Source: Ostrea edulis (Eukaryota). From it: DNA of 64,000 nt. The stretch's first letter is position 1, and the number at the start of each line of letters is the position of its first letter. Positions 10,235 to 10,500 of the stretch are shown here, piece by piece. The notes below the pieces were generated by a model. The model did not search any database. It worked only from the letters and a program-made list of their open reading frames with translations, and was not told the DNA's origin. A program made the translations under genes and the position numbers. The stretch covers positions 9,176,001 through 9,240,000 of the forward strand of contig NC_079172.1 of assembly GCF_947568905.1 (NCBI RefSeq), read 5' to 3'.

Positions 10235-10500
10235 GGCCCGTGGGGATCCGGGTTAGAGTAGGTCCTCAGTACCCCTTGCTTGTCGTAAGAGGCGACTAAA
10301 TGGGGCGGCCCTTCGGATGACACCGCAAAAACCGAGGCCCTGTGTCACAGTAGGTGGGACACGATAAAGATCCTCCCTGCTCAAAGGCCGTAAGCGCCGA
10401 GCATAGGCCTAAATTTTGCAGCCCTTTACCGGCAATGGTGACGTCTCCGTATAAGTGAAATATTCTCGAGAGGGACGTAAAACAATACTCAATCAATCAA
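10235..10500 (+). mobile_element. SINE-like element, family B
   Basis: Full length. Perfect 13-bp TSD TCATTGTAAAGTA (10222-10234, 10501-10513). Confidence 0.92.
10237..10306 (+). ncRNA. Candidate pistol-like structured RNA / ribozyme forming the head of SINE family B
   Basis: Manual fold: P1 CCCG/CGGG; loop GGGG pairing with downstream CCCC (pseudoknot); linker UUAGA(A/G)UAG; P2 GUCC/GGGC; UCAG; GC; P3 UUGUCG/CGAC(U)AA; AU junction. Catalytic activity not demonstrated. Confidence 0.4.

What the first reader, a model, noticed from the sequence alone, without database searches (positions are those of the whole stretch)
10237..10306. SINE-like retroposon headed by a pistol-ribozyme-like RNA instead of a tRNA
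Six copies (1584, 6225, 10235, 18912, 55691, 61487) start with the same ~70-nt head, which has no A/B boxes. Two have perfect 13-15-bp TSDs, one a near-perfect 10-bp TSD, and all have (CAAT)n tails, so they were retrotransposed. The head reads CCCG-UGGGGAUC-CGGG-UUAGA(A/G)UAG-GUCC-UCAG-UA-CCCC-UU-GC-UUGUCG-UAAGAGG-CGACUAA-AU-GGGGC. This maps element by element onto the pistol ribozyme as I recall it (env25: CGUGG-UUAGGG-CCACG-UUAAAUAG-UUGC-UUAAG-CCCUAA-GCG-P3-GU-GCAA): P1 with a pseudoknotted loop, an A-rich linker, P2, 'AG' before the pseudoknot strand, 'GC' after it, a P3 hairpin and a 2-nt NU junction. The 1584 copy has a compensatory P2 change (GUCC/GGGC to AUCC/GGGU). I know pistol ribozymes only from bacteria and metagenomes, so a eukaryotic retroposon-linked version would be new. 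Caveats: G42 is missing, the pseudoknot has only 4-5 pairs, and pistol cleavage at A^U would remove the head that the copies retain. The RNA may therefore cleave elsewhere, be a new fold, or be a non-catalytic relic.
Basis: partly seen in the sequence, partly recalled or inferred. Interest (0 to 1): 0.85.

Follow-up and report, generated by a model that had tools for sequence, protein, structure and literature searches.

The report
Oyster LP-SINE with LINE-derived head
This is an abundant short retroposon of the flat oyster whose 72-base non-tRNA head fits the 'LINE-promoter' (LP) SINE type described in oysters in 2016, and none of the tests run here supports the idea that the head is a pistol ribozyme.

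Summary
The window has six full-length copies of a ~268-bp retroposon (three on each strand) with target-site duplications, (CAAT)n tails and a shared non-tRNA head. The genome has over 1000 candidate copies. The head is a sharply bounded 72-nt module. The body and tail are shared with tRNA-headed SINEs in the same window.

The genome's size matches Ostrea edulis. Matetovici et al. 2016 (PMC4758252) described this architecture as 'LP-SINEs' in Ostrea, Saccostrea, Haliotis, Littorina and scallops. They report a ~70-bp head homologous to the first ~70 bp of Nimb and RTE LINE 5'UTRs.

The pistol reading fails every test I could run:
- Rfam gives no match to any family, even at E<=10 on 96 nt.
- The fold is no more stable than shuffled sequence (z about 0).
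- The pistol-like helices total -7 kcal/mol against an MFE of -22.5.
- 4.8% of shuffles fit the same topology.
- 73 copies show no real covariation.
- The 'compensatory' change occurs in one copy, while up to 12 copies leave that pair broken.

I could not reach cross-phylum homologues, so a different structured-RNA or 5'-ribozyme role is untested. It is not excluded.

At least nine other first-stage notes flag the same head elsewhere in this genome.

The parts
10235..10306 (+). 72-nt LP-type head of the copy in the finding (GGCCCGTGGGG...AAATGGGGC). The first two bases vary between copies.
   Evidence: The 72-nt limit comes from solo heads and from the join with the shared body.
10307..10500 (+). 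Body and tail of the same copy. The body is shared with tRNA-headed SINEs. A variant polyA-signal-like hexamer (AATACT here, AATATA in the consensus) lies just before the (CAAT)n tail.
10222..10234 (+). 5' target-site duplication, TCATTGTAAAGTA
10501..10513 (+). 3' target-site duplication, TCATTGTAAAGTA. Its first three bases could equally be the end of the tail.
6225..6495 (-). Full-length copy closest to the family consensus. Head at 6424-6495, with 15-bp TSDs at 6496-6510 and 6210-6224.
1584..1857 (+). Older full-length copy (about 83% identical) carrying G28A + C72T
55692..55955 (+). Full-length copy (about 83% identical)
61486..61761 (-). Full-length copy (about 82% identical) with a near-perfect TSD
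18912..19150 (-). Copy with an internal deletion of about 24 nt in the 3' part of the head
18..294 (+). Sister SINE with a tRNA-derived head (A box TGGCCGAGAGG, B box GGTTCGAATCC) on the same body and (CAAT)n tail
56680..56977 (+). Second SINE with a tRNA-type head (GAGTTCGAGC) sharing the body and tail
50679..50834 (-). 5'-truncated copy (body and tail only)
52728..52864 (+). 5'-truncated or decayed body fragment
38030..38177 (-). Decayed fragments of body and tail

Best explanation
The element is a non-autonomous non-LTR retroposon of the 'LP-SINE' type in a flat oyster genome, most probably Ostrea edulis. It has three modules.
1. A 72-nt head that is not derived from tRNA, 5S, 7SL or snRNA. 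By its architecture it corresponds to the ~70-bp module that Matetovici et al. 2016 traced to the extreme 5' end of Nimb- and RTE-clade LINE 5'UTRs.
2. A body, reported as partial Nin-DC in the Saccostrea counterpart, that is shared with tRNA-headed SINEs.
3. A LINE-type tail ending in (CAAT)n.

Shown here: retroposition (TSDs, microsatellite tail, 5'-truncated copies), a sharp and heritable 5' end, head swapping on one body, and very high copy number.

Inferred: the RNA starts at the first base of the head, a purine, because the head carries a promoter that lies downstream of its own start site, as LINE 5'UTRs do. Transcription is more likely by RNA polymerase II than III. A partner LINE's reverse transcriptase then recognises the tail and copies the RNA by target-primed reverse transcription. 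I put the promoter role at about 50-60%. It has never been tested. The head is not a member of the pistol class.
For: - Six copies with TSDs and (CAAT)n tails, and more than 1000 candidates genome-wide.
- The head ends exactly at nt 72. Solo heads in other contexts stop there, and the tRNA-headed sister SINEs at 18-294 and about 56680-56977 share the sequence from about nt 73 onward.
- No tRNA and no Rfam family.
- G000 is 894,786,893 bp. The published Ostrea edulis assembly is 894.8 Mb in 10 chromosomes (PMC10979132).
- PMC4758252 reports TSD-flanked SINEs with a ~70-bp LINE-derived head in Ostrea edulis and O. conchaphila. It also reports a Saccostrea family whose LP head sits on the body and tail of two tRNA-SINE families, and variant polyA hexamers such as AATATA before the terminal repeats. 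The consensus here has AATATA directly before (CAAT)n.
- 48 of 56 LP-headed copies keep an internal TTTT, which would be a Pol III terminator. The two tRNA-headed copies that cover the site have only TTT.
- The terminal dinucleotide is partly subfamily-linked, so it is templated.
- Contigs from four coded organisms, including one true RNA-Seq run, contain the element and break at the head's 5' edge.
Against: - I could not align the head with the published LP consensus or with Nimb-17_LMi, I-3_DR or RTE-9_CPB. The paper's figures and supplements, and Repbase, are not held. The identification therefore rests on architecture, length and host genus, not on sequence.
- The paper lists AATATA and ACTAAA for Haliotis and Ostrea. 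If that order is as written, the published Ostrea family may differ from this one.
- No LINE carrying the head was found in the DNA I could fetch.
- Neither promoter activity nor the polymerase has been demonstrated by anyone.
- The T4 argument rests on only two tRNA-headed copies.
- Contigs cannot show transcription starts.
Confidence: 0.78

Rival explanations
1. The head is a new kind of structured RNA, possibly a self-cleaving ribozyme that cuts at or just before its own first base. It would free the retroposon RNA from upstream transcript, as HDV-like ribozymes do for R2 and L1Tc and as twister variants do for the RTE-clade LINE Perere-3.
For: - The copies have a precise 5' end flush with the TSD.
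- The literature reports that the ~70-nt module is shared by LINEs of two clades and by SINEs across molluscs, insects, fish and a turtle. That implies function, and the authors themselves point to the L1Tc promoter/ribozyme precedent.
- Perere-3 shows that 5' ribozymes occur on RTE LINEs in another lophotrochozoan.
- Solo heads at C2, C6 and C8 are 94-100% identical while their flanks are 75-81% identical.
Against: - No Rfam ribozyme family matches at E<=10.
- There is no sequence similarity to the S. mansoni twister.
- No HDV-like P1 can form from base 1 within the 72 nt (my own inspection).
- The MFE is no better than shuffles (z 0.00 to 0.42).
- Three different folds fit equally and none has covariation.
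- The subfamily change G28A spread without compensation.
Confidence: 0.08
2. The head is a eukaryotic member or close variant of the pistol ribozyme class.
For: - The order of possible helices (P1, loop-to-junction pseudoknot, P2, P3) matches the pistol topology.
- An A-rich linker follows P1.
Against: - The Pistol CM (gathering score 34.5 bits) gives no match on the head at E<=10 or in the genome.
- The nested helices sum to -7.0 kcal/mol against an MFE of -22.5.
- 145 of 3000 dinucleotide shuffles satisfy the same relaxed topology.
- The pseudoknot is 4 bp. P3 reaches the 2-nt junction only through two A-U pairs across a bulge, whereas pistols keep that junction strictly.
- Cleavage at that junction would detach the head, yet all copies keep it.
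- Pistols are known from bacteria, phages and metagenomes.
Confidence: 0.02
3. The head is a very degenerate tRNA- or other small-RNA-derived Pol III head, so the element is an ordinary SINE2/SINE3-type element.
For: - The head is tRNA-sized (72 nt).
- GGGTTAGAAT resembles the T-arm/B-box GGGTTCGAAT of the sister SINE.
- Ends 2-7 and 66-71 can pair like an acceptor stem.
Against: - ARAGORN and the Rfam tRNA, 5S, 7SL and snRNA models find nothing.
- The T-arm resemblance scores 15 against 13.9 +/- 2.3 in shuffles, and 636 of 2000 shuffles do as well.
- The B-box-like motif lies at nt 16-25 with no room for an A box, and it lacks the C at tRNA position 56, which I recall as conserved in B boxes.
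- The consensus has an internal TTTT.
Confidence: 0.05

Closest known systems
LP-SINEs (LINE-promoter SINEs) of molluscs: Oco/Oed_LP, Sgl_LP, Hdi/Hmi_LP, Lsa_2 and pectinid MESC SINEs (Matetovici et al. 2016, PMC4758252)
   Same: - A non-tRNA head of about 70 bp at the very 5' end.
- Variable-size TSDs and 3' tandem repeats preceded by a polyA-signal-like hexamer.
- Found in Ostrea.
- Body and tail shared with tRNA-headed SINEs, exactly as for Saccostrea Sgl_LP versus Sgl_tRNA_1/2.
   Different: Sequence identity with the published consensus could not be checked. The copy in the finding has AATACT and the family consensus AATATA before (CAAT)n, whereas the paper may list ACTAAA for Ostrea.
[quoted passage not shown]
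   Same: According to PMC4758252, these LINEs share only their first ~70 bp with the LP-SINE heads. That is the same size as the module delimited here.
L1Tc/ingi Pr77 (a 77-nt 5' module with promoter and HDV-like ribozyme activity)
   Same: A short module conserved only at the extreme 5' end of otherwise different retroposons. The 2016 authors named it as the analogy.
   Different: No HDV-like fold or Rfam match here, and no activity data.
Twister T-variants at the 5' end of Perere-3 (RTE clade) in Schistosoma mansoni (PMC8501958)
   Same: A structured 5' module retained in retroposed copies, with the TSD flush against its 5' end and a short tandem repeat at the 3' end.
   Different: No sequence similarity and no twister family match.
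Pistol self-cleaving ribozyme (Rfam RF02679; Harris et al. 2015, PMC4604425)
   Same: The same order of potential helices, and an A-rich linker.
   Different: - No CM match.
- A 4-bp pseudoknot and a bulged P3.
- No covariation.
- The cleavage site would remove the head.
- Known only from bacteria, phages and metagenomes.
SINEU / Tx1 LINEs with snRNA-derived 5' ends (Kojima 2015, as cited in PMC4758252)
   Same: LINE and SINE families share a short 5' module.
   Different: There the module is a recognisable U1/U2 snRNA. Here no RNA gene matches.

Membership tests
Pistol ribozyme (RF02679) | Scores against the family covariance model (gathering score 34.5 bits) | tested here: not met
   No match at E<=10 on 331 nt or on 96 nt, and none in the whole window at gathering. 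The genome-wide scan found 0, with only 62 of about 113,000 candidates scored.
Pistol ribozyme (RF02679) | P1, P2, P3 and a loop-to-junction pseudoknot supported by covariation (PMC4604425) | tested here: inconclusive
   The helices can be drawn. Across 73 copies, 92.3% of cells pair against 91.8% in shuffles. Each double change is a single copy, and 0-12 copies break each pair. Copies within one genome decay neutrally, so they cannot settle this.
Pistol ribozyme (RF02679) | A strictly conserved 2-nt junction between P3 and P2 that holds the cleavage site | tested here: inconclusive
   The junction is 2 nt (A66 U67) only if U46-A65 and U47-A64 across bulged U63 count as P3. With the 4-bp core of P3 the junction is 5 nt. 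A strict search for contiguous helices fails on the real sequence.
Pistol ribozyme (RF02679) | Ten highly conserved nucleotides | not testable with these tools
The consensus figure is not held. The failed CM score is an indirect negative.
Pistol ribozyme (RF02679) | Mg2+-dependent self-cleavage | not testable with these tools
   This needs a bench test. The runs available were contigs, which cannot show RNA ends.
LP-SINE (Matetovici et al. 2016) | A non-tRNA head of about 70 bp at the 5' terminus of a short TSD-flanked element with 3' tandem repeats | tested here: met
LP-SINE (Matetovici et al. 2016) | Head homologous to the first ~70 bp of the Nimb-17_LMi, I-3_DR and RTE-9_CPB 5'UTRs | not testable with these tools
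   Repbase and the paper's alignments are not held. A text search for head strings found nothing.
LP-SINE (Matetovici et al. 2016) | Body and tail exchangeable with tRNA-headed SINEs of the same species | tested here: met
   Window 18-294 and about 56680-56977 carry tRNA-type heads on the same body and (CAAT)n tail.
LP-SINE (Matetovici et al. 2016) | Occurs in Ostrea | tested here: met
   The genome is 894,786,893 bp and the O. edulis assembly is 894.8 Mb. The species is inferred from the matching size, not named by a tool. Another follow-up note in this scan calls the genome an oyster.
Classical Pol III SINE (tRNA, 5S or 7SL head) | A head derived from a Pol III small RNA, with internal A/B or A/IE/C boxes | tested here: not met
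   The consensus also has an internal TTTT.
HDV-like ribozyme | A nested double pseudoknot with P1 starting at the first nucleotide | tested here: not met
   No match to the HDV-type families in Rfam. By my own inspection the only 3' partner for bases 2-7 is 66-71, which leaves no room for P1.1, P4 or P2 inside the 72-nt module. CMs detect this class poorly, so the negative is moderate.
Twister ribozyme / T-variant | Conserved L4/P4 core (CCGGUCCCAAGCCCGG) and the L1/L2 motifs | tested here: not met
   No Rfam twister match. Local alignment to Sma-1-15 scores 13 against 14.2 +/- 2.4 in shuffles.

The most novel reading that the evidence does not exclude
The 72-nt LP module is a so far unrecognised class of functional RNA, for instance a 5'-terminal self-cleaving or RNP-nucleating element. 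It would be exchanged between Nimb and RTE LINEs and SINEs across Metazoa, and the oyster family, with over 1000 copies, would be a convenient natural test bed for it.
Probability: 0.07. Interest if true: 0.8.

Novelty: already known. Interest (0 to 1): 0.22.

Why it matters
As found, it is an ordinary repeat and part of the known 'jigsaw' of mollusc SINE modules. Its practical value is for annotation. This family, its tRNA-headed sisters and the solo heads should be masked as LP/Nin-type SINEs, not repeatedly flagged as ribozyme candidates. At least nine other first-stage notes in this genome flag the same head.

One question is still open. Why is a ~70-nt module kept at the extreme 5' end of LINEs of two clades and of several SINE families in different phyla? 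Neither its promoter activity nor any RNA-level activity has been tested since 2016. The oyster consensus delimited here (72 nt, with a sharp 3' border) gives a clean construct for that test.

Tried and rejected
- **Rfam.** Searched at gathering on the whole window, and at E<=10 on 331 nt and on 96 nt. Nothing was found.
- **Pistol model on the whole genome.** No match, but this is a weak test because few candidates were scored.
- **LINE carrying the head.**
  - A pattern that excluded the SINE body gave about 200 hits. These were SINE copies with indels, truncated copies, and a small family of solo heads inside AT-rich arrays. None was a LINE, and there were no ORFs downstream.
  - A search for LINE endonuclease domains listed many elements, including a 1282-aa ORF family.
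- **Cross-species homologues.**
  - Two viral-contig scans found nothing.
  - The metagenome scan found three contigs with decayed bivalve-like copies.
  - The prokaryote-genome scan found one chance match in an Anaerolineae MAG.
- **Literature.** A full-text search for head strings found nothing. No supplements are held for the 2016 paper.
- **RNA runs.** Only Logan contigs were available, so no transcript starts or cleavage ends could be read.
- **nhmmer.** A head profile searched over all held DNA found no divergent heads on other bodies.
- **tRNA origin.** Rejected, because the T-arm resemblance is at chance level.
- **Twister relationship.** Rejected.

Full report
**What is there**

The sequence at 10235-10500 is a 266-bp element. 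It begins GGCCCGTGGGGATCC and ends in CAATCAATCAATCA, and a perfect 12-13-bp duplication (TCATTGTAAAGTA) flanks it. BLAST of this copy against the window finds five more full-length copies and several 5'-truncated ones.

The full copies lie at 10235-10500 (+), 6225-6495 (-), 1584-1857 (+), 55692-55955 (+), 61486-61761 (-) and 18912-about 19150 (-). The last has lost about 24 nt of the head. Three are on the minus strand.

A 21-nt head probe is expected 0.00 times by chance. The genome search gives 1051 first-look candidates, and all 40 that were scored are 96-100% identical to the head. In 36 copies with flanks, the TSDs abut a terminal dinucleotide (AT, GT, AG, GG, TG) followed by the invariant CCCGTGGGG. 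That dinucleotide partly follows subfamily markers such as A24G, so it is inherited and not added at random.

**Limits of the head**

A pattern search that excluded the SINE body turned up heads followed by unrelated sequence. In four fetched loci the similarity to the SINE stops exactly at nt 72, at ...AAATGGGGC.

In the window itself, 18-294 is a SINE with a clear tRNA-type head (A box TGGCCGAGAGG, B box GGTTCGAATCC). About 56680-56977 is another. Both share the body from about nt 73 and the (CAAT)n tail with the element in question. The family is therefore modular: a 72-nt head, a shared body and a shared tail.

**Identity**

G000 has 894,786,893 bases. The published Ostrea edulis assembly is 894.8 Mb in ten chromosomes (PMC10979132).

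Matetovici et al. 2016 (PMC4758252) describe 'LP-SINEs' in Ostrea edulis and O. conchaphila, Saccostrea, Haliotis, Littorina and scallops. These are TSD-flanked short retroposons with terminal tandem repeats. Their first ~70 bp are homologous to the first ~70 bp of the 5'UTRs of Nimb-17_LMi (locust), I-3_DR (zebrafish) and RTE-9_CPB (turtle). In Saccostrea the LP head sits on the body (partial Nin-DC) and tail of two tRNA-headed families, which is the arrangement seen here. The authors note polyA-signal-like hexamers such as AATATA just before the repeats. The consensus here reads ...AACAATATACAATCAAT.

I could not compare sequences directly, because the figures, the supplements and Repbase are not held and a text search for head strings found nothing. 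The identification rests on architecture, module length and host genus. I rate it likely but not proven at the sequence level.

**The pistol reading**

- Rfam finds no family in the window at gathering. It finds none at E<=10 on 331 nt or on 96 nt.
- The Pistol model finds nothing in the genome, although few candidates were scored.
- ARAGORN finds no tRNA.
- The head folds no better than dinucleotide shuffles, with z from -0.42 to 0.42.
The MFE is -22.5 kcal/mol.
- The sequence is rich in G4 and C4 runs, so many 4-bp helices can be drawn. 145 of 3000 shuffles (4.8%) satisfy the same relaxed pistol topology.
- Pistols keep a strictly 2-nt junction between P3 and P2 (PMC4604425). Here that junction exists only if two A-U pairs across a bulged U are added to a 4-bp P3. 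A search for strictly contiguous helices fails on the real sequence.

**Covariation**

I aligned 73 distinct heads. For the pistol-like fold, 92.3% of cells pair, against 91.8% after shuffling. Every double change is a single copy, and 0-12 copies break each pair.

The cited G-C to A-U change in the 1584 copy is one of these single cases. At that pair, 12 copies do not form a standard pair, mostly from the subfamily change G28A, so copies carrying the 'broken' pair multiplied. A three-way-junction fold fits equally well, and RNAalifold prefers a third fold with a covariation term of -0.12. Copies within one genome decay neutrally, so they cannot decide between folds. Only the cross-phylum homologues can.

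**Other origins tested**

- The GGGTTAGAAT stretch resembles a T arm, but the alignment to the sister SINE's tRNA head is at chance level (15 against 13.9 +/- 2.3).
- There is no similarity to the S. mansoni twister that heads the RTE-clade LINE Perere-3. That paper (PMC8501958) does show that 5' ribozymes occur on such LINEs.
- An HDV-like fold cannot be built inside the 72 nt (my own inspection).

**Transcription**

48 of 56 LP-headed copies keep an internal TTTT. The two tRNA-headed copies that cover that site have TTT. This is a weak hint that the LP family is not transcribed by Pol III, in line with the 2016 proposal of a LINE-type promoter.

The element is present in contigs of four coded organisms, including one true RNA-Seq run. 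Contigs break into unrelated sequence exactly at the head's 5' edge. Contigs cannot show RNA starts or cleavage sites.

**Searches for relatives**

- Two viral scans found nothing.
- The metagenome scan found three contigs with decayed bivalve-like copies. One has a variant head that keeps GGTTAGATTAGG..CAGTACCCC but lacks the 3' hairpin.
- The prokaryote scan gave one chance hit.

**Verdict**

The retroposon reading is right. The pistol reading is not supported. The kind of element has been published for this genus since 2016.

What the 72-nt module does is still unknown. A promoter is the most likely role. A new 5' RNA element is possible, at about 7-8%. Many other first-stage notes on this genome flag the same head.

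Noticed in passing
L061-L063, L066, L044 (G000 C2:9.20 Mb, 9.21 Mb, 97.43 Mb; C9:67.38 Mb); further hits on C6:69.44 Mb, C8:53.52 Mb, C5 and C4: About 11 solo 72-nt heads sit inside AT-rich minisatellite-like arrays (units such as ATAGTACAGTAAATAAA), often in pairs 3.5-18 kb apart. The heads are 94-100% identical to each other while the flanks are only 75-81% identical. This could be a composite head-plus-VNTR element or a macrosatellite.
   Followed up: partly
window 18-294 and about 56680-56977: Two SINE families with a tRNA-derived head share the body and (CAAT)n tail of the LP family. One body therefore carries three head types.
   Followed up: partly
SINE consensus nt 181-184 (e.g. window 10415-10418): An internal TTTT is kept in 48 of 56 LP-headed copies. 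The two tRNA-headed copies seen have TTT at this site. This may separate Pol II-transcribed from Pol III-transcribed families.
   Followed up: partly
window 44476-45198 (+): A 241-aa open frame with a weak reverse-transcriptase match (RVT_1, E 7e-4, below the cut-off). It is probably a decayed retroelement fragment.
   Followed up: no
G000 e.g. C4:73821173, C1:42132452, C1:53865030, C5:16637026, C9:21362975: At least ten loci have an identical-scoring endonuclease domain inside an open frame of 1282 aa. This looks like a recently active LINE family and is a candidate partner or head donor. Its 5' ends could not be fetched.
   Followed up: no
L067:3129-3290 (metagenome contig OBLZ010032637.1): A related SINE from another bivalve-like source keeps the head block GGGGTTAGATTAGGCCCCCAGTACCCC. 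It replaces the 3' hairpin and the GGGGC with 21 unrelated bases before the shared body.
   Followed up: partly
L041:1445-1524: One copy has three changes together (U13C, U29A, U32C) in the GGGGAUCC/GGUCCUC region. They are not compensatory in any of the folds tested.
   Followed up: no
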